NCBI GenBank assembly: GCA_002269645.1
Contig: NIVC01002975.1
Span: forward strand, 1 to 64,000
DNA length: 64,000 bases
Direction of reading: 5' to 3'
Source of the DNA: Macrostomum lignano
Taxonomy: Eukaryota
Positions 1,561 to 54,937 of this stretch are shown piece by piece (the stretch's first letter is position 1; every line of letters starts with the position of its first letter). The notes beneath the pieces were generated by a model, which did no database searches, was not told where the DNA came from, and saw only the letters and a program-made list of their open reading frames with translations. The position numbers and the translations under genes were made by a program.

Positions 1561-4500
1561 GTGATGAAAATCGTTGAATCAATTCGGCCCGACCGTCAGA
1601 CGCTGATGTTCAGCGCGACATTCCCCCGCCAAATGGAGATTCTGGCGCGCAAAGTGCTGGACTCGCCTATCGAAGTGGTGGTGGGCGGCCGGGCGGTTGT
1701 CTGCAGCGAGGTTCAACAGGAGATCATCCTGCTGACTGAGGACGACAAGTTCTTTAAGCTGTTGGAACTGTTGGGCGTCTATCAGGAGCGCGGCGGCTGT
1801 CTGATCTTTGTTGACCGACAGGAGAAGGCTGACGAGCTGATGAAGCTGCTGATGAAGCATGCCTATCCGTGCCTGTCTCTGCACGGCGGCATCGACCAGT
1901 ACGACCGGGACAGCGTCATCACCGCCTTCAAGCGAGGCGACGCCCGCCTGCTGATCGCCACCAGCGTGGCCGCCCGCGGCCTTGACGTCACCGGCCTCAT
2001 TCTGGTTGTCAACTACGACTGCCCCAATCACTACGAGGATTATGTGCACCGCTGCGGCAGGTGCGACTGGGAGTTGCTTACTGTATCTAATCTTGTTAGA
2101 TGTCCTCTTAGACTGATTGATGCCTTTGACCCTCATCTCCCTCACGATACCTAAGGGCTGTCACCTTTGACCCTCATCTTCTCCCTCACGATGCCTAAGG
2201 GCTGTCACCTTTGACCCTCATCTTCTCCCTCACGATACCTAAAGGCTGTCACCTTTGACCCTCATCTTCTCCCTCACGATACCTAAGGGCTGTCACCTTT
2301 GACCCTCATCTTCTCAATCACAATACCTAAGGGCTGTCACCTTTGACCCTCATCTTCTCCCTCACAATACCTAAAGGCTGTCACCTTTGACCCTCATCTT
2401 CTCCCTCACAATACCTAATGGCTGTCACCTTTGACCCTCATCTTCTCCCTCACAATACCTAAAGGCTGTCACCTTTGACCCTCATCTTCTCCCTCACAAT
2501 ACCTAAAGGCTGTCACCTTTGACCCTCATCTTCTCAATCACAATACCTAAGGGCTGTCACCTTTGACCCTCATCTTCTCCCTCACAATACTTAAAGGCTG
2601 TCACCTTTGACCCTCATCTTCTCCCTCACAATACCTAAAGGCTGTCACCTTTGACCCTCATCTTCTCAATCACAATACCTAAGGGCTGTCACCTTTGGGT
2701 TGACGACTAAACATGGATTTTGGGGAAAGTTTGAGAGTGGGTCAGAGACCAAGCTCTACTGCTACTTTGCTCCCTGAGTCTCTTGATTTCAATGCTAATT
2801 ATTGAAATATTACACGTAAGCTTCAACTCTACCGCGCAGGACCGGCCGGGCCGGCAACAAGGGCCACGCCGTGACTTTCATCACTCGCGATCAGGAGAAA
2901 CACGCCGGCGATCTGATCTGGGCGCTTAAATTGGCCCAGGCAAATGTGCCAGCTAATCTGCAGGCTTTATGGGACGCCTACGTGCAGCGAATGGAGGCTG
3001 AGGGCAAACCTGTGAGTAGTATTATGATGTAACCGCCCTTGTCGCCTGTCCGCTCCGTAGAGAGACGAACGCATGACTAGAGGGGGCAATGACCGTAGGC
3101 TGCCTATGACCGGGCAATGACCTGACGGACCTCCAGCACCAGACTGTCCCGCCCACATGATTAGTAGCTTTGGTAGCGCTTCGTGACCAGAGGGCCAAGG
3201 ACCCACATGGACCCCACCTGTAGCCAAGGTGCAATAGTTGGTCACTCGGTCATAGTATGACCGAGTGGCTGCCACCACTCTATGTGACCTGGCGCACCTG
3301 GATCTTTCTACCAGACCTCTCGAGGCTAGAGCCCCGCCTGGATTGGTTACCAGGGGATTTAGGCTAACAGGGGAGACGCATGCAGCCGAGTACAGGGACT
3401 CTGCTTGGGGCATGATCGGGAACTCTGGGCTCAATCCTGGAGGATTTCTCAGCAGGGGATCCTTTGTGGCTGTGAGCGAGGCTGACTTGCGACTTTGATT
3501 ACTAAGAGTAGTATGAGGCGAACATGTACTGTCTACAGTTTAGATTGCTCAGGGCGAAGGGACGCGTTAGCATGGGGTTGCAACCTTCCTACTGCCATTC
3601 TGTGCCAAGACTCGCTAATCCCTCTACTGCACGCACACGCGGCCCCGCAGCACGCACTCACAGGCGGGCTTTGCACGGGGAGAGGCCATTAGCTTACCCA
3701 AACTTCCTTATGCTTTGCCACCCGGGAGAAAGGCTTAGCAAGCCATGAGTGAAATGATGGTGAAAGATTGAATAATGATGAAGTTAGTTAATAGTTAATA
3801 ATTAGGCCCTTAGGCAAATAAGCAGGCAATTAGGCAGCTTCACTATTGAGTAAAATACAGCAAAAGATACGGTATCACAATTGGCTCAGCTCTCTAATCA
3901 GACAATGGAAAATAGGCAAACCCCGGATAAGCAAAGGCAATTAGAGCACAAATTAGTAGCAGGAACTTACCGGCAGCTGCACAGAGAGAGAGAGAGGCGG
4001 AGTGACCGAGGGCGGCTGTAGGCTGCAGTCAGGCAGACGGTGAAGCGGCGATGCGCTGGAGCGACGAGGCGCCGATGTAGATCAGGCGATGCTGATGATG
4101 CTGGGCGGTATCAGACCGCTGGCCGATAGGCGAGCTCACTTGGGGAGCTAAGGATAACTTGGCGGTAACAGACCGCGGACCGGCAGGGATTCGTCTTATA
4201 GACGAATGGGTCAGAACTCAATCTGACAGCAAGTCCAAAGAAGGACGAGGAGAGGAACAGAGATAACCTCAGTTGAGTATTCTCATGCCGAAATCGCTTC
4301 CTTTTATAGACCTCACAGCCGCCTCCTCAAGGTCGTTACCATGGCTCCCTCTCTCTGATTGGCTGCCGGCAGAATGACGTCAGAATGAGTCATGATGAGA
4401 AGCATGAGACCGGCATAGCAACATGAGAAATCGGGAAAATGCGCAATCCGGAGGTGGGGTGGGGGGATAATTGGCGCAGCGGGTGGTCGCGAAAGTGTTG

Positions 4501-6792
4501 CGCAAGCAAACATTGAGAACAATAGGGCTGGGGTCGAGAACAAAGGAATTGGAAATCGGGGATAATTGGGGAAAACTGAGAACAATGGAAGAGTAAACAT
4601 TGGAGAAAAGGTGATAATTAGGTGCGAAAACGAGAACAAAAGAAAGAGAAAATCGGAGAAAATGTGATAATTGGTGGGGGTCGAGAGAACAAAAGAAGCA
4701 AAAACGAGAACAATAGAAGCGGAGGTGGGGTGGGTGTCACATGAGAAATTTGGGAAGGAGAACAATAGCGTGAGAAAAGGTTGCGCAAGAGAGGGGGATG
4801 AGTCATCGATGAGTCACCGAGGGGGAGAAGGGGTCACACGACTTGCGTCACCGTTTGGGAGTTTGAGAGGGGATGGGGAGACGGTGAGCACACAAAGTAC
4901 TGTAAGTAGACACAGGGAAAGAGGGGACAGCGCAGGAAAAGAGTGCAGAGGGAGACAAAAAAGGAGGAGGTAGAGAAAGTACAGGAAGAATAGGGCGGGA
5001 ACAGAAGAGATAGGGTAGAGGGGGAGGTACAGAAAGGGGTAGGGGCTCCGGAAAGGCAGGTGTGGCGGCAGGAGAGACGGGACCAAGGCAGCAGGAGGGG
5101 TGCAGCAGAGCGGGAGTCTCCAGGCCCGGTCGGAGACCTGGCCGAGTCTCGACAGCTCTGTGCAGAGGGTGCACGGGATAGGAGGCACTTTCAAAAAAGT
5201 TCCCATGCCCTATCCCGCGACCAGAGCGTGGTTACATCAATTAGTAATAGTAGTAGTTAAAGTCTATAGTAGATTTTTATTTTATAGAAAACAAAAATTG
5301 CGAGCCAACATCAAAACGCGCAGTTCAATGTGTGCAGACACAGTAGAGAAGTCAGGACCGCTGTACACCCTGCGTGGGTGCCTGCGTACTTATCCGTCTG
5401 CTCACCTCCCCGCTGATAAATCCCTTATTAATACGAATTTCATCACAGTGCGGCTTTAAAGTAAGTGACTTACCGAATCACGTCGAATTTACCTCTCGCC
5501 CCGCCAGGTGCGCAGCGCCAGCGGCTTCACTCGCCGCTGCAAAGGCTACGCATTTGACGACGAGGAGTCGCGCCTAGCCAAAGATCGCAAGAAGCTGCAG
5601 AAAGCCTCCATGGGTCTGCAGGACTCCGACGACGAGGCCGACAATATCGACGATCACATTGAGGAGCTCTTCGCCCCGCGACAGCGCGTCAAGAATGTGG
5701 CGCCTGGCGCTCCCACTGCCTCATCGACTGCCGCTTCGACCTCAGCGACGCTCACCTCCGCTGCCGCCAGCGCTGTCGCTTCATCCTCAGCCTCCAACAC
5801 GGTTGCGGTATCTTCCTCGCAATCTTCTGCTGCACCGTCCACCCCGGCCGCCGCCGCCGCTGCCGCTGCAGCCGCTGCAATCGCCGCCAACTGGGCCGCT
5901 GGTAACGTTGGAGGCGGGGCCGCCCCGGTGGGCTCGGCTGCCTCCGCTGTGCCCGACGTAGCTGCAGCCGCAGCCGCCGCTGAGCAGCAGCCGCAGAACA
6001 AGGAGCTCCAGCGGAAACTGCAGCTGGCCAAGCAGCGGGCCACGCTGGTTAATCTGGGCCGCCAGGAGGACCAGCAGCAGGCAGCCGCCACAGCCATGCG
6101 CGGCTCAGTCAGTCTGAATCCGTCATCGATCTCCGTTAGCAGCAAAACTCTGGCTAACCAGATGGCCGAGCGATTGAATGTCCGACTGGGCTACCGGCCA
6201 GCCGAGGAGACTCCAGTGGAAGCTGAGGAGACCACTGTGAAACGGTAAGGCCCGGCTGTAGAACTCCGGGTAGAACTGGATTTTTTAGATGCTTATCGAT
6301 TTTTAAGATCTTATAATGTTTCAACTAGCTACTCAGAGTAGAAATAAAAGTTTTTAAACTATTTCTTAAATAAAATTACGTTTTTGTGCTTTTCAATGGT
6401 ATAACAAACGTTATTTATTATGTATATAAAAAAATTTAACCTAGAAATCCACCTTGACCCGCAGCTACGAGGTGGAGCTGGAGATCAACGACTTTCCCCA
6501 GAACGTGCGCTGGCGCCTCACCAGCCGGGAGTTCCTTGGCAACCTGTCCGAACTGTGCGACGTCGGCATCTCCGTACGCGGCGCTTTTATGCCGCAGCGG
6601 CCGCCGCCGCCGCCAACTCCCGAAGCAGCCGAGGCGGCAGAGCGGCCGCTCTACCTGCTAGTGGAGTCGCTGTCGGATATGAACATCCAGAATGCTAAGA
6701 AGGAGATCACCCGGGTGGTCAAAGAGGAGCTGCTCCGTCTGCAATCTTCTACGCAGTTGAACCGGCTGCCCGGTCGCTACAAAGTGCTCTAA
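1561..6792 (+). CDS. DDX46: DEAD-box helicase DDX46/Prp5, 3' part (5' exons not found in the window)
   Basis: Exons 1561-2060, 2840-3011, 5508-6244 and 6465-6792, all GT-AG with matching phases. Motifs SAT, ARGLD and HRCGRTGRAG, plus LQDSDDE and the C-terminal [17 protein letters not shown] typical of DDX46. Confidence 0.95.
2123..2696. repeat. 44-bp minisatellite, about 13 copies, in a DDX46 intron
   Basis: Unit gatacctaagggctgtcacctttgaccctcatcttctccctcac. Confidence 0.95.
3025..5239 (-). mobile_element. Probable solo LTR (Gypsy-like), 2.2 kb, in a DDX46 intron
   Basis: TGATGTAACC...GGTTACATCA termini with about 20 bp of imperfect inverted repeat and a perfect 4-bp ATTA duplication (3021-3024, 5240-5243). 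Minus-strand TATAAAA at 4302-4308. No coding capacity seen. Confidence 0.75.
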
Positions 6793-9208
6793 GCTGCTTT
6801 GCTTCTCTGCCTTGAGAGCGACTGCTTTGTTTGACCCATACACGAATTCAGTAGAAGGGAAACTTTCTTAGAAAATTCTTGACGGCTGGCTTTACGTCTT
6901 TTTTTCGAAAAAAAATTGCGCGGTGCTCTGATGTGCCAGCGGCCCAGGCTCGATTCCAAATGCGTCTTAGAAACCCAGCCTTAAAATGTTTTTTTTAAGA
7001 AACAAAACTTCTACGTTTCTACTTAAGTCGTCAACGGTTTGACCTTGAATGTCCTTGCGCAGCGTTTTCTGATGGTTATGGCTTTAAATTTTCCAATATA
7101 AATGTGCGCATGGGAAATTTTTAATAAAGCTATCCACTATTAAGTACTTCGGAATTTTTTCGTTTTTTTCTGGTGCATGATGTGGTATAGAATCGATAAT
7201 ATTTGCATGAGTTAGTTACTCGTAACTAACGAGTATCAGTTTCGCTGGTCAGTTCAAGTCTAAATTATAGTTGTCATACAGTATGCCTGTTTCAAAGTAA
7301 CTGCTACTTGTTTCGTATTGCTACGTATTTGCATTAACAAAAAAAGGTAATAAAAATTCTGCAATACACACCTAGTGTTGCACCTATCTGCTTTGTGCGT
7401 TTTCTGTATCTAAAGATATTTGAAGTTTCTAAATACTGGATACCTAGAAAACTTCTTTTCGCATATTACAGCGACAAAATTTCGGACATGGGTGTACGTA
7501 ATGTTCGTAATATTTTTGGTGGAAAATAATTATTTCGAGACTTGTTATAATTAATAACTATTCATTCATTCTACTTGAAAAGGGGAGCGAGCGAACGCAT
7601 TACAATATGCTTTCTACTTAAAAACTAAAATGTGTATATATATAGCAACTCCGTTGAGATGCAACTTTTTGGATAGCTGTTTCAATAAATGAACTGTATT
7701 GGGCACTGGTATACCTATAGTTATCTTGATGGGTGATAATACTAGGCTTCATCAATCGAAAATCAGTCCAACAAAATAAGATTGCTTGCTATCTTCCGTT
7801 CCCGTCGGATCGATGTACATATACATAGAAAATCATAAATTATGTAGCCGTTAGATGGCCGAAATTGTCATGCACCTAATTAATTTACGCTAAATTAATC
7901 CAATAAAGTGCATTCAATAAAACGCATGCGAACCAAACGTAGCATGTCCCGACAAAAAAATCCGGGTTTGCTTGAAATAAAAGAATTTAAACAAAAAATA
8001 TTCATTAATGAACAGCTTTCGAGAATATTAATTATACTTTACTGAAAATGCAATGCAGTAGCTTTTTTTTCAATAAACGTACTAAAAAAATTACTTTTGC
8101 AATTGCTCAAAGGCGCGTCAGTTCTTTTGCCATCATTTTGGTTTAGAAATATGCATCTTTTTGCATTTGCATATTTTTTATCGACCAACCAACAGGACAG
8201 GAAAGACAAAATCAAAATGCTTTATAAAACGGCGATAATACCTATTTAAAACCTTTCAATGCTTTTGTAGGATATAAATTCTTTAGAAAAACCTTGTTTT
8301 TTGTCTTTGGCCATAAGTTTTCTTTCAAAGCAGATTTCTGTTTTTTTGCATTTTGCGGCTATACACTGGTCACTGAATCTGGGTTGGGGATAGGTTCCAT
8401 TTATTTAAGACTCTGTCAAATAAACCGAAAGTAGGGGATTTTGATTAAATTAGTTTCTCGTTGTTTAAAAATATCATAAAGTATTAAAAATATACTAAAA
8501 TATTATAAAGTATATATGACAAGTTACTTATCACAGTTTTTATGTGGCATGCTTTTTCAGTGGTCATACAGCCAAGCCATGACCATGTTACCATACCTTT
8601 TTAGCTAGTGATATGAGCTTTTGATTTTATTATTATTTAATTGCATGTATTAAATCACAATTTTCTGGACCCTGCATTCTTATCCTTAAATAATAAAATT
8701 TACTGACAGTTTTCAACCATAAAGAAAGTAAAAAAATATCAATTTTTAGTGTACAATTTCATACTGTTTTAGCCTAAAAATGTTGAATTCTATTATCTGG
8801 CAGTGCTGCTATAAAAATTAAATAGGATATGGAGTAATTTTGGACTTGAATTACAAACTAAAATTCTAAAAATTCTAATCAAGTCAATATTTCAAGTATG
8901 TAAAATTTTAAAGTATATGAATATTTGAGTTTTATTGCTTTAGTTTTCTTCTGCACCATGTTTTTCCCCATATATTCTAATATACTAATCATACTTCCAT
9001 TTATAGTGATGAACAGGCAGTAGTATAATTTTTTAATATATTTTATACATTAGATATTGAAATTTGTCATGTCTTAATTACACATTTTAATATTTTAAAT
9101 ATTCAATTAAGTATACAATTCGAAATCTTGAGTCTGAATGAATAATAGAAATGGGTACATTGTGGCCACCCCAACCTGACATTAGATTTAAACTCAACTT
9201 TCTTTCAG

Positions 9209-9553
9209 GCAGTCCCTCTGGTTTATGGCGTTGGACCAGGCATTGTCGCCCTGGGCTGCCTGCTCTGCCTCACCCTACTGTCGGGGCTGATCGCCTCGCG
9301 CTTGAAGTCAAGTTCTGCTGGTCGCCAATTTGGTCTTTTGATCGGCGCCGCCGCTCTGTTGGCCTGCGCCGGCTTGCTCAGCCTTCCACGGCCGGCTGTT
9401 CCGGCGGCCGACGCTGCCACGGTCGACTTCATGCTGATTGGCCGGGCCAGCCTGCTGTGCGGCCTGGCTGTGGCCCTGCTCCTTGCCGGCCTGCAGGAGT
9501 TCGTCCTGCTGAACTCGGTTGGCGGCGGGCCGGACTTTGTGCACCGGCTTTAA
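9209..9553 (+). CDS. TMEM218: TMEM218-like ciliary transition-zone protein, paralog a
   Basis: AVPLVYGVGPGIVALGCL..LIASR..LLSLPR..TVDFMLIGRASLL aligns by eye with TMEM218 (GVGAG..LLSR..LLLFPR..IVDDFFIGRYVLL). Start is either ATGG at 9151-9154 spliced to 9213, or an external ATG at acceptor 9208. Confidence 0.75.
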   Translation, partial: AVPLVYGVGPGIVALGCLLCLTLLSGLIASRLKSSSAGRQFGLLIGAAALLACAGLLSLPRPAVPAADAATVDFMLIGRASLLCGLAVALLLAGLQEFVLLNSVGGGPDFVHRL

Positions 9554-10080
9554 CTAGCGGCTGGACCCGCTGGGAGTAAGACGGTGTATCTGCATGTATG
9601 GGAATTTAATTTAATCTCCTAGTTTCTCTTCACGTGTATTACATTTTTATTTTACTTGTGATTGTAATTTTAACTGAAATATTCATTGTATTGTATTGTA
9701 CTGTGAATGTAATTTTGATTGCACTGTCAACTGTACTTTTGACTGTGCTGTTTTTTGTACTCTTTATTGTACTTCAGAATGTATTGTTTTTGTACTTTTT
9801 AATGTACTTTTAATCGTTTCTAATCCCAATCCCATAAATGCTGGTATTTAATGTGTATCGAACAGAAATCCGAATGTTCCTATCCATACAAATTTCATTA
9901 AAACTCTTAACGTATTCTCGATTTATGATCTTAGTCTGACTGTTTCGTCCCGATGCACTAAAAAACATCCAGCTTGTATCGTGTACTTTCGCAACTATGT
10001 ACATGTATTAGCAATTTGAGATTAGTGTCAATCAAACAGCTTCCGGTATTTTAATTGTGCAATTTATGCATCTTTTCTAG

Positions 10081-11168
10081 TCTCCATTTTTGGTAAGTAT
10101 GTCCACGCAGTTTGCACTTGGTATTTTCTACAAATAAATCCTCTGCAAAAAAATTTTTACACAAAATTATATTGTCTCAACTTGAATTTAATGATTAATT
10201 GATTAATCGGGGAGTTTTAGCTAACAACTATAATAAATTTTTTAATGCTTTCTACGAGTATTAGGTCGTAGTAGAAAGAGATGAATTATAAGAGACTATA
10301 CTGTCTTGGCTATAAAACATTTGCTAACTGTCCGATTTGGGAGTGGCTTTTACAAGCTCGAAATTTCACATTATAGTTTTAGAATTTGTTTAAGTGACTA
10401 GCTGGGCTTTGCGACGATGTGAAGTTTCGAGCTCTTGAAGTTTCGAGCTTATGAAAGTTTCGAGCTTGTGAAAGCTTCGAGCTTGTGAAGTTTCGAGCTT
10501 GTGAAGTTTCGAGCTTGTGAAGTTTCGAGCTTGTGAAAGCTTCGAGCTTGTGAAGTTTCGAGCTTGTGAAGTTTCGAGCTTGTGAAGTTTCGAGCTTGTG
10601 AAAGCTTCGAGCTTGTGAAGTTTCGAGCTTGTGAAAGCTTCGAGCTTCTGAAGTTTCGAGCTTGTAAAGTTTCGATCTTGTGAAGTTTCGAGCTTATGAA
10701 AGCTTCGAGCTTAAGAAAGTTTGGAGCTTTTAAAGCCCCCGCCACGTAAAACTTGGCTAAAAGCAGCTTAGTAACTCTATATACAGCTAAGACAACACTT
10801 AAAAGTGTTTAAATATTGAAGATGATTCGAATTACTCACCCCAGGCCACCGTCGGCTCGGGCCTCATCCTGCTAGCGGTCCTATGGGGCCTGGCGCTTCT
10901 CCTGCTTACCGTGTCCGCCCGGGCGCATTCCGGGCTCCGTTTTATTGGCGTGCCGGTCTTGCTGCTCACCGGCCTGGTCACGGCTATTCTGGTCACCATG
11001 CCGCGCGGCGATTCGCAACTAGCCGATGCCAGCGCTATGTTCGATGCGATGTACGTGCCAAGGGTTGTGCTGCTGCTGCTATTCTCCCTGCTGGCGCTGT
11101 CGTCGGGGCTTGTCTACTTCCAGATGGCCGCCGGGTTGCGTCTGGTGCCAGCTGAAACTGCGAGCTGA
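10081..11168 (+). CDS. TMEM218: TMEM218-like protein, paralog b
   Basis: Exons 10081-10092 (SPFL; ttttctag|...|gtaagt) and 10845-11168: ATVGSGLILLAVLW..RAHSGLRF..ILVTMPR..MFDAMYVPRVVLL. The start codon is not in these exons. Confidence 0.7.
10430..10720. repeat. 16/17-bp minisatellite, about 18 copies, in the TMEM218b intron
   Basis: Units gtgaagtttcgagctt and gtgaaagcttcgagctt. One inverted unit at 10352-10370. Confidence 0.95.
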
Positions 11169-11430
11169 TTGGCTGGGACTGGTGCGAGGTGCCTGGCTCT
11201 GATTGGCTGGGACTGGTGCGAGGTGCCTAGCTTTGATTGGCTGTGACTGGTGCGAGTTGTCTGGCTCTGATTGGCTGGGACTGGTGCGAGGTGCCTGGCT
11301 CTGATTGGCTGGGATTGGTGCGAGGTGTCTGGCTCTGATTGGCTGGGACTGGTGTGGGGTGCCTGGCATTGACTGCAATTTGATTGGCTGTGACTGTTAC
11401 AGGGTGCCTGGCTTTGATTGGCTGGGACTG
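11165..11430. repeat. 34-bp minisatellite, about 8 copies, starting at the TMEM218b stop codon
   Basis: Unit gattggctgggactggtgcgaggtgcctggctct. Confidence 0.9.
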
Positions 11431-22016: not shown

Positions 22017-23210
22017 TAGTGATGGACCGAATGTGGATTTTTGCAAGTTTCTGAAACCGAATCCGAATGTACAAAAAAAATCCGAATCCAAATCCGAATG
22101 TTTCTGAATGAAAGCAAAGTGTCAGGTAAACGGCGGGAGTAACTATGACTCTTTTAAGTTACGAAAATGTCTCATCATCTAATTAGTGCGCACATAAATT
22201 GACTGACAAGATTCCATCTCTCCTGGGATTATATTCGTACTCGTACTTTTATCTTAGGGGTCGGATGTGATCACAATTGTGAATTCAAGACCATTTTTTC
22301 ACGATAGTGATTTTGTTGAAACCTGTTCCAACAGTTGTGAATTTCTGCTTACATTTTTATTAGAAATATAACTTTTCTACTTGATTTACCAAAAAACGTG
22401 AACACAAATGTGTAAAGAATTAACAAATTTTAAATTTGTTGACTTGATAGCATTACGGCCAAGTAGCTATTATCAATATACGAGTATGATTTCTTTTCTT
22501 GTTTGTTATTTTCAACACTTGTAACTTACAAGCTCATAACATGTATGCTAATATAAATTCACAATCACGATCACGCCTGCCTTTGAAAAATTCACGCATG
22601 ACCAAAATCTTCTACTTGTCCGACCTCTACTGATATCTATCGCGAAACCAAATTTAAAGAGACGGACTTAGATAGGAAATTCAGTTCTACTTCTACTGTG
22701 TTGCATGAACATCTAATTCTAGTACTACTGACTATAGCTAATGAGTGACATATATATATACAGTGCAATTATGATAATTTTACTGTACATACGTATAGTC
22801 CATGCATTTTGAAAAAACCTGTTATTACACTTAAACAATAATTACCAAAATATTTCCGTAACTTTAGGTTTATTGTCTTACGGGTCCCTAGGTTTAGTAA
22901 ATTTACTTATTCAACTTTTTTAAAACATATATTGCTGCAAAAATAGACAATCGTAGAAAAAAAAATAATGTGATAGATTTTGCTCTTTGCCTTTTAATTT
23001 TCTTTCTTTTTAGTTTTTAGTTTCTTTATTTAATGGGTTGCATGCTTTGGTTTCTTGATTTGTAATATTTATTTTAGATTTGAATTTTAGAAGCACATTC
23101 GGAAATATTCGGAAAAAAAAATTTCCGAATCCAAAACATTCGGATTCCTATAAAAGTAAGACTTTTTTTCGGATTCGGATTCCGAATCCGAATATTCGGA
23201 TCCATCACTA
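22017..23210. mobile_element. Non-autonomous hAT element, 1194 bp
   Basis: TIR tagtgatgga(t)ccgaat, subterminal ccgaat/attcgg repeats, and a perfect 8-bp TSD ATAAAAAT (22009-22016, 23211-23218). Confidence 0.92.
22125..22224 (+). pseudogene. Degenerate 28S rRNA fragment inside the hAT element
   Basis: ggtaaacggcgggagtaactatgactct is identical to the conserved eukaryotic LSU sequence, and similarity continues through catctaattagtg to agattcc. Not a functional rRNA gene. Confidence 0.9.
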
Positions 23211-53764: not shown

Positions 53765-54091
<327 letters not shown>

Positions 54092-54214
54092 GCAAAGTCT
54101 GCGTTCCCATGCGAAAGTGGTTTTCTACTTCTAGATCAGATAGTTCTACGAGCTTGTGCGCTGTTAATGGGTTGATAGCTCTACCTATCTATTTCTTTTC
54201 ATGAACGTTAAAAC

Positions 54215-54230
54215 GGCCCTTTTCAGGGCC
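54215..54230 (+). terminator. Histone 3' stem-loop of H4
   Basis: aaaac-GGCCCT-TTTC-AGGGCC-acca. Confidence 0.95.
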
Positions 54231-54937
54231 ACCACATCTAAACGATGCCACGTAGTCCCATGGCTATATTACGTATACGCATGTTGTATCAAGCTGAGCC
54301 GGCAAATGTCATAGTAGGCAAATGACTAGGTCCTATTTATAGTTATATAATCATATAACTCGTTCCTAACGACCTAAGATTGATTTAGGGCTTGTTCAAT
54401 GCGGCCCATGATCAAAACGGCCCTTTTAGCGACAGCCATCAAATTCTGCTCTTACAAATTAATGGCTACGCTTAGATATTATTATTTAACATTCCATCAA
54501 GCATTTCACTAATATTTACGATAAAAATATCAATTACCTTTTAATTTGCCATCTCTAAAATTTAGCTTTTAGCAAATTCGGGGCGGGAATGTAGCGCCCT
54601 CGCCCCTCACTAAAATCATCCGATGTCGTACATACACATTCGTACATCTACAAATTTATTTTCATTTTAGTTTTAATCATTAGCATGATTAAACTGTGCG
54701 ACTGATTTATGTCAGTTATTTTTATGTGCAGATAAAAAAATTAAAGAAAAATATCAATTAAAACAAAAATAACGGAATAATTGGCGGGACTCGCTGCTGG
54801 CATATCATTTATTCTGCCTTTATTAGGAAATTAGAAAGTTTCTGTTTTCACAGACATTGCGAGGCTGCCTTTGAAAATTAAAGGCATGGCAAAACCGCGA
54901 CATCCTTGATATAATTAAGTGCCAGAGTGAGCGACAG

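What the first reader, a model, noticed from the sequence alone, without database searches (positions are those of the whole stretch)
10066..11168. TMEM218b begins with a 12-nt ATG-less exon: candidate start codon donated by a spliced leader
Seen: ttttctag|TCTCCATTTTTG|gtaagt joins in phase 0 to the main exon. The nearest upstream ATG (10066) ends in the TAG of the acceptor itself. Adding a single Met gives MSPFLATVGSG, in exact register with TMEM218 MAGTVLGVGAG. Established: flatworm spliced leaders end in AUG, which can act as initiator. Inference: the protein is made only after trans-splicing. Caveat: a cis alternative exists (ATG CTG|gtattt at 9838-9843).
Basis: partly seen in the sequence, partly recalled or inferred. 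Interest (0 to 1): 0.7.

Follow-up and report, generated by a model that had tools for sequence, protein, structure and literature searches.

The report
Flatworm TMEM218 gene lacking its own ATG
A small membrane-protein gene of the flatworm Macrostomum lignano has no start codon of its own and almost certainly borrows the AUG at the end of the trans-spliced leader, a mechanism known in flatworms since 2006. The proposed 12-base first exon is probably not needed, and nothing I could check supports it.

Summary
The window is Macrostomum lignano contig NIVC01002975.1.

The main exon (10845-11168) encodes a true TMEM218-family protein. It has no usable genomic ATG: an in-frame stop lies at 10800, and the first in-frame Met is residue 53. 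The M. lignano spliced leader ends in ATG, so an SL-donated initiator is well supported.

The 12-nt exon is not supported.
- The public, SL-read-guided annotation gives a 107-aa 5'-partial CDS starting exactly at 10845 in all three genomic copies.
- This includes a copy that has an in-frame ATG 14 codons upstream of the acceptor, which the model ignores.
- Five of 26 family representatives have the N-terminus that direct trans-splicing would give (M-xxx-GxG).
- The micro-exon adds only 1-2 Pfam bits and has intron-like GC content.
- It carries 2 of 12 substitutions between copies, giving Leu to Ile.
- A candidate of this kind arises by chance in 14-71% of simulated outrons.

A divergent tandem paralogue, TMEM218a (9209-9553), has the same ATG-less, acceptor-flush layout.

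Best reading: the SL is spliced directly at 10845, giving MATVGSG... This is a known mechanism with new examples.

The parts
10845..11168 (+). TMEM218b single coding exon: 107 codons (ATVGSG...ETAS) plus TGA, with no initiator ATG. The acceptor is ...ttactcaccccag|GCC.
   Evidence: Searches give the sequence and translation. Pfam TMEM218_N scores 32.5-34.7 bits against a cut-off of 27. The public annotation product P0001 covers exactly this range in three contigs. Between copies there are 1-5 substitutions in 324 nt, all synonymous, because the protein is identical in all three.
10843..10844 (+). AG acceptor, proposed as the spliced-leader trans-splice site. SL ...TTGCATG joined to GCCACC puts the AUG in frame 0.
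   Evidence: The annotated 5'-partial CDS begins at the next base in all three copies. The annotation pipeline cuts transcripts at SL-read peaks (PMC5730564). The site ends in CAG, so it partly matches the trans-acceptor motif [T/C]TNCAG (PMC8629364). The flanking 25 nt are identical in the three copies.
10800..10802 (+). In-frame TAA upstream of the acceptor. There is no ATG between it and 10845 in the window copy.
   Evidence: the upstream in-frame open stretch is KCLNIEDDSNYSPQ.
10081..10092 (+). Probably not part of the main mRNA.
   Evidence: Present as described. It reads TCTCCATTTATA in the two other copies, and L001 has a 14-nt insertion in the acceptor pyrimidine tract. GC is 0.33, like its flanks. 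The chance expectation is 0.14-0.71. It is not in the annotated CDS.
9209..9553 (+). TMEM218a, a divergent tandem paralogue: one coding exon of 114 codons (AVPLVYGVGPG...) plus stop. It has no ATG and starts flush with the acceptor ttctttcag.
   Evidence: hhalign against the TMEM218 family alignment gives probability 95%, E 2.5e-8. It is annotated as a 5'-partial CDS in contig NIVC01004326.1. The 20 in-frame codons open upstream contain no ATG.
9557..10844 (+). AT-rich interval between TMEM218a and TMEM218b, the likely outron or intergenic region. It holds AATAAA at 10133 and 10232 and a 16-nt minisatellite at 10418-10736.
11165..11367 (+). Six copies of a 34-nt tandem repeat that starts at the stop codon. 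It is the presumed 3' UTR.

Best explanation
TMEM218b of Macrostomum lignano is a one-coding-exon gene whose genomic sequence lacks an initiator codon. The 35-nt spliced leader (...TTGCATG) is trans-spliced directly onto the acceptor at 10843-10844. Its terminal AUG then lies in frame with GCC ACC GTC..., and translation gives a 108-residue, three-helix TMEM218-family protein, MATVGSGLILLAVLW... The upstream tandem paralogue TMEM218a (9209-9553) is built the same way and would give MAVPLVYGVGPG...

Shown here: the sequence features, family membership, the absence of any usable genomic ATG, and the annotated CDS boundary.
Taken from the literature: the SL ends in AUG, and flatworm ribosomes can start at that AUG.
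Inferred: that the SL is joined at 10845 rather than 10081, and that translation starts at the SL AUG.
For: 1. The window is M. lignano assembly GCA_002269645.1, contig NIVC01002975.1.
2. The M. lignano SL is CGGTCTCTTACTGCGAAGACTCAATTTATTGCATG, and 30% of genes are trans-spliced (PMC8629364). Macrostomum workers note that its final ATG is a start codon (PMC10468722).
3. The SL AUG is an established initiator in flatworms. Cheng et al. [quoted passage not shown] Echinococcus shows the same (PMC3510090).
4. The annotated product is 107 aa starting ATVGSG, and its range is exactly the exon, in three contigs. The pipeline cuts transcripts at SL-read peaks and then runs TransDecoder. A 5'-partial ORF flush with the AG therefore implies a transcript 5' end at 10845.
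5. Neighbouring helicase and EF-hand CDSs start with ATG, so the collection does not strip the Met.
6. In copy L001/L003 a derived in-frame ATG lies 14 codons upstream of the acceptor (MCLNIEDDSNYSPQ|ATVGSG). The annotated product is still the 107-aa partial, so the transcript model does not extend upstream.
7. The window copy has an in-frame TAA at 10800 with no ATG after it. The first in-frame Met is residue 53, after two of the three hydrophobic segments.
8. Five of 26 family representatives (MASLGTG, MASIGTG, MAYIGPG, MFNFGVG, MTNFGVG) have exactly the M+3+GxG N-terminus of MATVGSG.
9. TMEM218a shows the same layout. In the one copy where it is annotated, the CDS likewise starts at the acceptor without a Met.
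Against: - No RNA reads, ESTs or transcript-derived proteins could be examined. Exact look-ups of MATVGSG..., MSPFL... and MSPFI... found nothing, and a junction scan of metagenome contigs found nothing.
- Aligners can lose a 12-nt exon, so an annotated start at 10845 is strong but not decisive.
- A near-consensus donor (G|GTAAGT, 10093) lies upstream of the 10845 acceptor. If the primary transcript includes it, cis-splicing should compete with trans-splicing (the Conrad 1993 principle, cited in PMC8629364).
- The 10845 acceptor (CCCCAG) matches the trans-acceptor motif [T/C]TNCAG only partly.
- Most family members have 3-4 more N-terminal residues than MATVGSG.
Confidence: 0.7

Rival explanations
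1. The SL is trans-spliced at 10081, the 12-nt exon TCTCCATTTTTG is cis-spliced (10093 donor to 10845 acceptor), and the SL AUG starts MSPFLATVGSG... (112 aa). This could be the only form, or an alternative isoform that shares the 10845 acceptor with direct trans-splicing.
For: - Both splice sites are good and the join is in phase.
- Acceptor AG and donor GTAAGT are kept in all three copies, and the reading frame stays open (SPFL or SPFI). In L001 the acceptor becomes TTTTCAG, a full match to the trans-acceptor motif.
- The N-terminus then has the majority or vertebrate register.
- A strong upstream donor would be expected to turn the outron into an intron.
- Parasitic flatworms often share acceptors between cis- and trans-splicing (PMC12582326).
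Against: - The annotated CDS starts at 10845, not 10081, in all three copies. A transcript starting at 10081 would have given a 111-aa partial ORF.
- The gain in Pfam score is only +1.2 to +2.2 bits.
- Between copies, 2 of 12 positions differ, against 1-2.5% in the flanks (P about 0.006-0.04). This gives Leu to Ile and changes donor position -1, while the 107-codon exon has no non-synonymous change.
- GC is 0.33, the same as the flanks, against 0.64 in the exon.
- Such candidates arise by chance in 14-71% of simulations.
- Both AATAAA motifs of the interval lie downstream of it, at 10133 and 10232. If TMEM218a uses either, the micro-exon would fall inside TMEM218a's 3' UTR. Which signal TMEM218a uses is not known.
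Confidence: 0.15
2. A conventional cis-spliced first exon supplies the ATG, for example ATG CTG|gtattt at 9838-9843 or an exon further upstream. The annotated 5'-partial CDS would then be an incomplete model.
For: ATG CTG followed by GT exists at 9838-9845 and is kept in the three copies. About 35% of M. lignano donors do not match GT[AG]AG.
Against: - The donor GTATTT (GTAATT in L001) does not match the species motif.
- Only two GT[AG]AG donors exist in the interval, at 9576 and 10093. Neither has an in-frame ATG upstream before a stop (and reading).
- An incomplete transcript model would be unlikely to end exactly at the AG in three copies.
- The MLSPFL... variant, which adds this ATG exon upstream of the 12-nt exon, gives no Pfam gain (32.8 bits). 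The direct join 9843 to 10845 (ML-ATVGSG...) was not scored.
- TMEM218a shows the same ATG-less layout.
Confidence: 0.07
3. The locus is not translated into a full TMEM218 protein. It would be a decaying duplicate, or would yield only a truncated product from Met53.
For: There is no genomic ATG. M. lignano is a hidden polyploid with many redundant copies (PMC5730564, PMC10468722). TMEM218a shows amino-acid changes and a C-terminal frameshift between copies.
Against: Three copies of TMEM218b encode identical 107-aa products despite 1-5 synonymous differences, which indicates purifying selection. The family's invariant and near-invariant residues are kept. The gene is in a transcript-based annotation.
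Confidence: 0.05

Closest known systems
[quoted passage not shown]
   Same: The SL ends in AUG. The AUG is in frame with an ORF that lacks its own start. The SL Met is needed to give an N-terminus matching conserved orthologues, the same argument used for S. mansoni and Echinococcus cDNAs.
   Different: The species is M. lignano, a free-living macrostomorph, and the gene family is TMEM218. The evidence here is genomic and annotation-based only. No cDNA or translation assay was seen.
SL trans-spliced genes and operon-like gene pairs of M. lignano (Wudarski 2017, PMC5730564; Ustyantsev & Berezikov 2021, PMC8629364)
   Same: Two same-strand small genes each begin at an acceptor. The annotation is of the TBONE type, with transcript 5' ends placed at SL sites.
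   Different: The distance from the TMEM218a stop to the TMEM218b acceptor is 1291 nt. About 320 nt of that is minisatellite, so it is near or above the 1000-bp repeat-adjusted operon threshold of that paper. Operon status was not tested.
TMEM218 (Pfam PF25810, TMEM218_N)
   Same: About 110 aa with three hydrophobic segments. It has the invariant G-x-G near the N-terminus and the conserved W, P-R and R positions.
   Different: Identity to any other protein in the searched libraries is at most about 40%. The N-terminus is 3-4 residues shorter than in most members if the SL joins at 10845. The C-terminal EPxxAxPxK motif of the family consensus is not evident in TMEM218b.

Membership tests
TMEM218 protein family (PF25810) | Pfam TMEM218_N match above the curated gathering score | tested here: met
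   32.5-34.7 bits against a cut-off of 27, depending on the N-terminus used. P0001 also carries a precomputed PF25810 hit.
TMEM218 protein family (PF25810) | Conserved G-x-G, W, P-R and R positions, and three hydrophobic segments in about 110 aa | tested here: met
   G4, G6 and P53 are invariant. L10, W14, L49 and R73 are at least 90% conserved across 27 sequences. A Kyte-Doolittle scan gives three hydrophobic regions.
TMEM218 protein family (for TMEM218a, 9209-9553) | Significant profile similarity to the family | tested here: inconclusive
   Pfam alone gives 10.2 bits, E 0.79, below the cut-off. hhalign against the family alignment gives probability 95%, E 2.5e-8 over 92 columns. It is a divergent member at best.
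SL-AUG-initiated ORF (Cheng et al. 2006 type) | The organism's spliced leader ends in AUG | tested here: met
   From the literature: the 35-nt M. lignano SL ends ...TTGCATG (PMC8629364; PMC10468722). No SL gene lies in the window.
SL-AUG-initiated ORF (Cheng et al. 2006 type) | The mRNA is trans-spliced at an acceptor immediately 5' of the ORF | tested here: inconclusive
   Indirect only. An SL-guided annotation gives a 5'-partial CDS flush with the AG in three copies. No reads were available.
SL-AUG-initiated ORF (Cheng et al. 2006 type) | The SL AUG is in frame with the ORF, and no alternative in-frame AUG lies near the N-terminus | tested here: met
   The exon begins at codon position 1. 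There is an upstream in-frame stop at 10800, and the next Met is residue 53. The same holds at the 10081 acceptor, which has an in-frame TAG at 10078-10080.
SL-AUG-initiated ORF (Cheng et al. 2006 type) | Translation actually initiates at the SL AUG | not testable with these tools
   This needs Ribo-seq, N-terminal proteomics or reporter assays.
Coding micro-exon (10081-10092) | Transcript evidence for both junctions | tested here: not met
   The annotated CDS is a single block, 10845-11168, in all three copies. No transcript data could be reached that would show the junctions.
Coding micro-exon (10081-10092) | Conservation or coding signature above the flanking intron | tested here: not met
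   Two of 12 positions differ between copies, against 1-2.5% in the flanks, giving a non-synonymous change. GC is 0.33, equal to the flanks. The splice dinucleotides are conserved, but so are the 15 and 8 nt on either side.

The most novel reading that the evidence does not exclude
Both tandem TMEM218 paralogues of M. lignano depend entirely on the spliced leader for their start codon. TMEM218b would in addition use a 12-nt first exon, or alternate between the 10081 and 10845 acceptors, so that choice of trans-splice site sets the N-terminus (MSPFLATV... or MATV...) of a conserved membrane protein. This would be a case of trans-splice-site choice acting as a protein-isoform switch.
Probability: 0.1. 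Interest if true: 0.45.

Novelty: new member of a known kind. Interest (0 to 1): 0.25.

Why it matters
It adds one or two clear cases, in a free-living model flatworm, of conserved genes that cannot be translated without the leader's AUG.

The practical value lies mainly in annotation. Such genes are deposited as 5'-partial CDSs, or missed altogether: TMEM218a is unannotated in two of three copies. Gene finders that require a genomic ATG will truncate or drop them.

It does not change what is known about the mechanism, which was established in Schistosoma in 2006.

Tried and rejected
- tblastn of the exon product against the window found no close second copy. TMEM218a was found only by reading the annotated upstream gene and running hhalign.
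- The word-indexed homologue search returned only the window's own protein.
- Exact look-ups of MATVGSG..., MSPFL... and MSPFI... forms, and of the window's TMEM218a, found none in the collection, so no transcript-derived proteins exist there.
- A scan of metagenome contigs for SL-junction DNA, with a gap of 0-12 nt, gave 0 hits.
- Supplements of two M. lignano papers hold no TMEM218 entry.
- Cheng et al. 2006 is not held, so its numbers are quoted second-hand from PMC9851317.
- There is no SL RNA gene in the window within 3 mismatches.
- Rejected as a discriminator: Pfam score and register, because the difference is only 1-2 bits and short N-termini occur naturally in the family.
- Rejected: translation from unspliced read-through, because of the in-frame TAA at 10800.
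- Rejected: the 142-aa ATG ORF at 9151-9579. It is in a different reading frame from TMEM218a and was not tested further.

Full report
**Source and observation**

The window is the first 64 kb of Macrostomum lignano contig NIVC01002975.1 (assembly GCA_002269645.1, Mlig_3_7). Locus L005, fetched from that record, is identical to window 845-21168.

All letters and coordinates in the finding are correct:
- ATG 10066-10068 opens a 4-codon frame ending in the TAG whose AG is the acceptor.
- TCTCCATTTTTG occupies 10081-10092, followed by GTAAGT.
- The main exon runs 10845-11168 after ...caccccag.
- The two pieces join in phase 0.
- ATG CTG|gtattt lies at 9838-9843.

**What the gene is**

The 107-codon exon encodes a TMEM218-family protein.
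- Pfam TMEM218_N scores 32.5-34.7 bits against a gathering score of 27.
- An exhaustive HMMER search of 1.84 billion representatives found 26 relatives at E up to 1e-3, all at 40% identity or less.
- The alignment shows an invariant G-x-G near the N-terminus, an invariant Pro, and near-invariant L, W, L and R positions. All of these are present here.
- A hydropathy scan gives three hydrophobic segments.

**The gene has no start codon of its own**

In the window copy, the in-frame sequence upstream of 10845 is open for only 14 codons (KCLNIEDDSNYSPQ), back to a TAA at 10800. It contains no ATG. The first in-frame Met of the exon is residue 53, after two of the three hydrophobic segments. At the other candidate acceptor, the codon immediately before 10081 is an in-frame TAG.

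The interval holds only two donors matching the species motif GT[AG]AG, at 9576 and 10093. Neither has an in-frame ATG upstream before a stop (and reading).

**The leader**

The M. lignano spliced leader is the 35-nt CGGTCTCTTACTGCGAAGACTCAATTTATTGCATG. About 30% of genes receive it. The trans-acceptor motif is [T/C]TNCAG and the cis donor motif is GT[G/A]AG (PMC8629364). Macrostomum workers themselves note that the final ATG is a translation start codon (PMC10468722).

Use of the flatworm SL AUG as initiator is established. Cheng et al. 2006 found it in frame in 28% of trans-spliced S. mansoni transcripts, with more than 40 cDNAs requiring it (as summarised in PMC9851317). Similar evidence exists for Echinococcus (PMC3510090).

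**Which acceptor receives the leader?**

The only empirical evidence within reach is the public annotation. It came from a pipeline that maps SL-containing reads, cuts transcripts at SL peaks (TBONE), and then calls ORFs with TransDecoder (PMC5730564).

The annotated product is 107 aa, starts ATVGSG, and has a gene range equal to the single exon in all three genomic copies.
- A 5'-partial ORF can start flush with the AG only if the transcript model starts there.
- A model starting at 10081 would have given a 111-aa SPFLATVGSG... product.
- A model reading through from upstream would have met the in-frame stop.

Neighbouring helicase and EF-hand CDSs start with ATG, so the protein collection does not strip the Met.

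One copy provides a natural control. L001/L003 (NIVC01001554.1) has acquired an in-frame ATG 14 codons upstream of the acceptor (MCLNIEDDSNYSPQ|ATVGSG). Its annotated product is nevertheless the same 107-aa partial, so the transcript model does not extend upstream of the acceptor.

The caveat is that short-read and BLAT alignment can lose a 12-nt exon. The annotation is therefore strong evidence but not decisive.

**Tests of the 12-nt exon itself**

1. Chance. In first-order Markov simulations of the 1.29-kb interval, at least one in-phase, stop-free AG|3n<=60|GT[AG]AG candidate occurs in 71% of sequences. With at least 8 of 10 upstream pyrimidines the figure is 14%.
2. Copies. The two other copies read TCTCCATTTATA, which is Leu to Ile with donor position -1 changed from G to A. 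That is 2 differences in 12 nt against 1-2.5% in the surrounding non-coding DNA (P about 0.006-0.04). The 324-nt exon has only 1-5 differences, all synonymous. The AG and GTAAGT are kept, but so are the flanking 15 and 8 nt. L001 carries a 14-nt insertion in the pyrimidine tract that yields TTTTCAG.
3. Composition. GC is 0.33, the same as the flanks (0.28-0.34), against 0.64 in the exon with GC3 of 0.76.
4. Register. The MSPFL prefix does put the protein in exact register with the Pfam profile and with vertebrate-type MAGTVLGVGPG. It adds only 1.2 bits, or 2.2 bits for MSPFI. Five of 26 family representatives start M-x-x-x-G-x-G (MASLGTG, MASIGTG, MAYIGPG, MFNFGVG, MTNFGVG). That is exactly the N-terminus direct trans-splicing would give, MATVGSG.
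5. Poly(A) signals. Both AATAAA motifs of the interval, at 10133 and 10232, lie downstream of the micro-exon. If the upstream gene uses either, the micro-exon would lie in that gene's 3' UTR. Which signal it uses is unknown.

In favour of the micro-exon is a mechanistic point. A near-consensus donor upstream of an acceptor should favour cis-splicing if it is present in the primary transcript (Conrad 1993, as cited in PMC8629364). Flatworm acceptors are also often shared between cis- and trans-splicing (PMC12582326). I therefore leave it at about 0.15, including the case where it is only an alternative isoform.

**The upstream paralogue**

- It is one exon of 114 codons, AVPLVYGVGPG..., and starts flush with ttctttcag, a full match to the trans-acceptor motif.
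- The 20 in-frame codons open upstream contain no ATG.
- Pfam alone does not recognise it (10.2 bits). hhalign against the family alignment gives probability 95%, E 2.5e-8 over 92 columns.
- With an SL Met its N-terminus, MAVPLVYGVGPG, is of about the usual family length, two residues longer than the most common form.
- It is annotated in only one of the three copies, and there again as a 5'-partial CDS beginning at the acceptor.

Two tandem paralogues with the same ATG-less, acceptor-flush, phase-0 layout make direct SL-AUG initiation the most economical reading for both.

**Verdict**

- Observation: confirmed.
- Interpretation: partly supported. The SL-donated start is likely (about 0.85 across both acceptors). 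The 12-nt exon is probably spurious or minor.
- Mechanism: already known. This is a new member, or pair of members, in M. lignano.
- Interest: modest, mainly for annotation practice.
- The question can be settled directly from existing RNA-seq, which these tools could not reach.

Noticed in passing
window 9209-9553 (+); L004 8296-8643; L003 from 8467: TMEM218a is intact in all three copies but annotated in only one (NIVC01004326.1). In that copy a 1-nt deletion changes the C-terminus (...DFVPGFN against ...DFVHRL). The copies also differ by A/V and G/D substitutions, so it is less constrained than TMEM218b.
   Followed up: partly
L003 9959-10000 (same copy as L001); corresponds to window 10803-10844: This copy has a derived in-frame ATG 14 codons upstream of the acceptor (AAAAGT changed to GAATGT). 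It would allow an SL-independent 121-aa ORF if the region were retained in an mRNA. The annotation ignores it.
   Followed up: partly
window 10418-10736: A 16-nt minisatellite (TGTGAAGTTTCGAGCT, about 19 copies) lies between the two TMEM218 genes. About 210 nt of it are absent from copy L001.
   Followed up: partly
window 11165-11367: Six copies of a 34-nt tandem repeat (CTGATTGGCTGGGACTGGTGCGAGGTGCCTGGCT) begin at the TMEM218b stop codon, so the TGA is part of the first unit.
   Followed up: no
window 10060-10071: CAATTTATGCAT, directly upstream of the 10081 acceptor, resembles the SL 3' end CAATTTATTGCATG with one deleted base. This is probably chance. There is no SL copy in the window within 3 mismatches of the last 18 nt.
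   Followed up: partly
window 9576-9580: A GTAAG donor motif lies about 20 nt after the TMEM218a stop codon. It could define a 3'-UTR intron or a cis-splice within a two-gene precursor.
   Followed up: no
window 22059-22214 (+): A degenerate fragment of eukaryotic 28S rRNA (Rfam LSU_rRNA_eukarya, 55.9 bits, model positions 2130-2335) sits isolated in AT-rich DNA. It may have been carried there by a mobile element.
   Followed up: no
window 53780-54091 (+) and 54210-54256 (+): A histone H4 gene (103 aa) is followed by a canonical histone 3' stem-loop (Rfam RF00032, 35.1 bits).
   Followed up: no
window 1564-6792 (+): A DEAD/Helicase_C/KH_12 helicase gene is annotated as 577 aa here but 1141 aa in the other two copies, where it runs beyond the fetched loci. 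The shorter model may be because this gene lies near the start of the contig.
   Followed up: no
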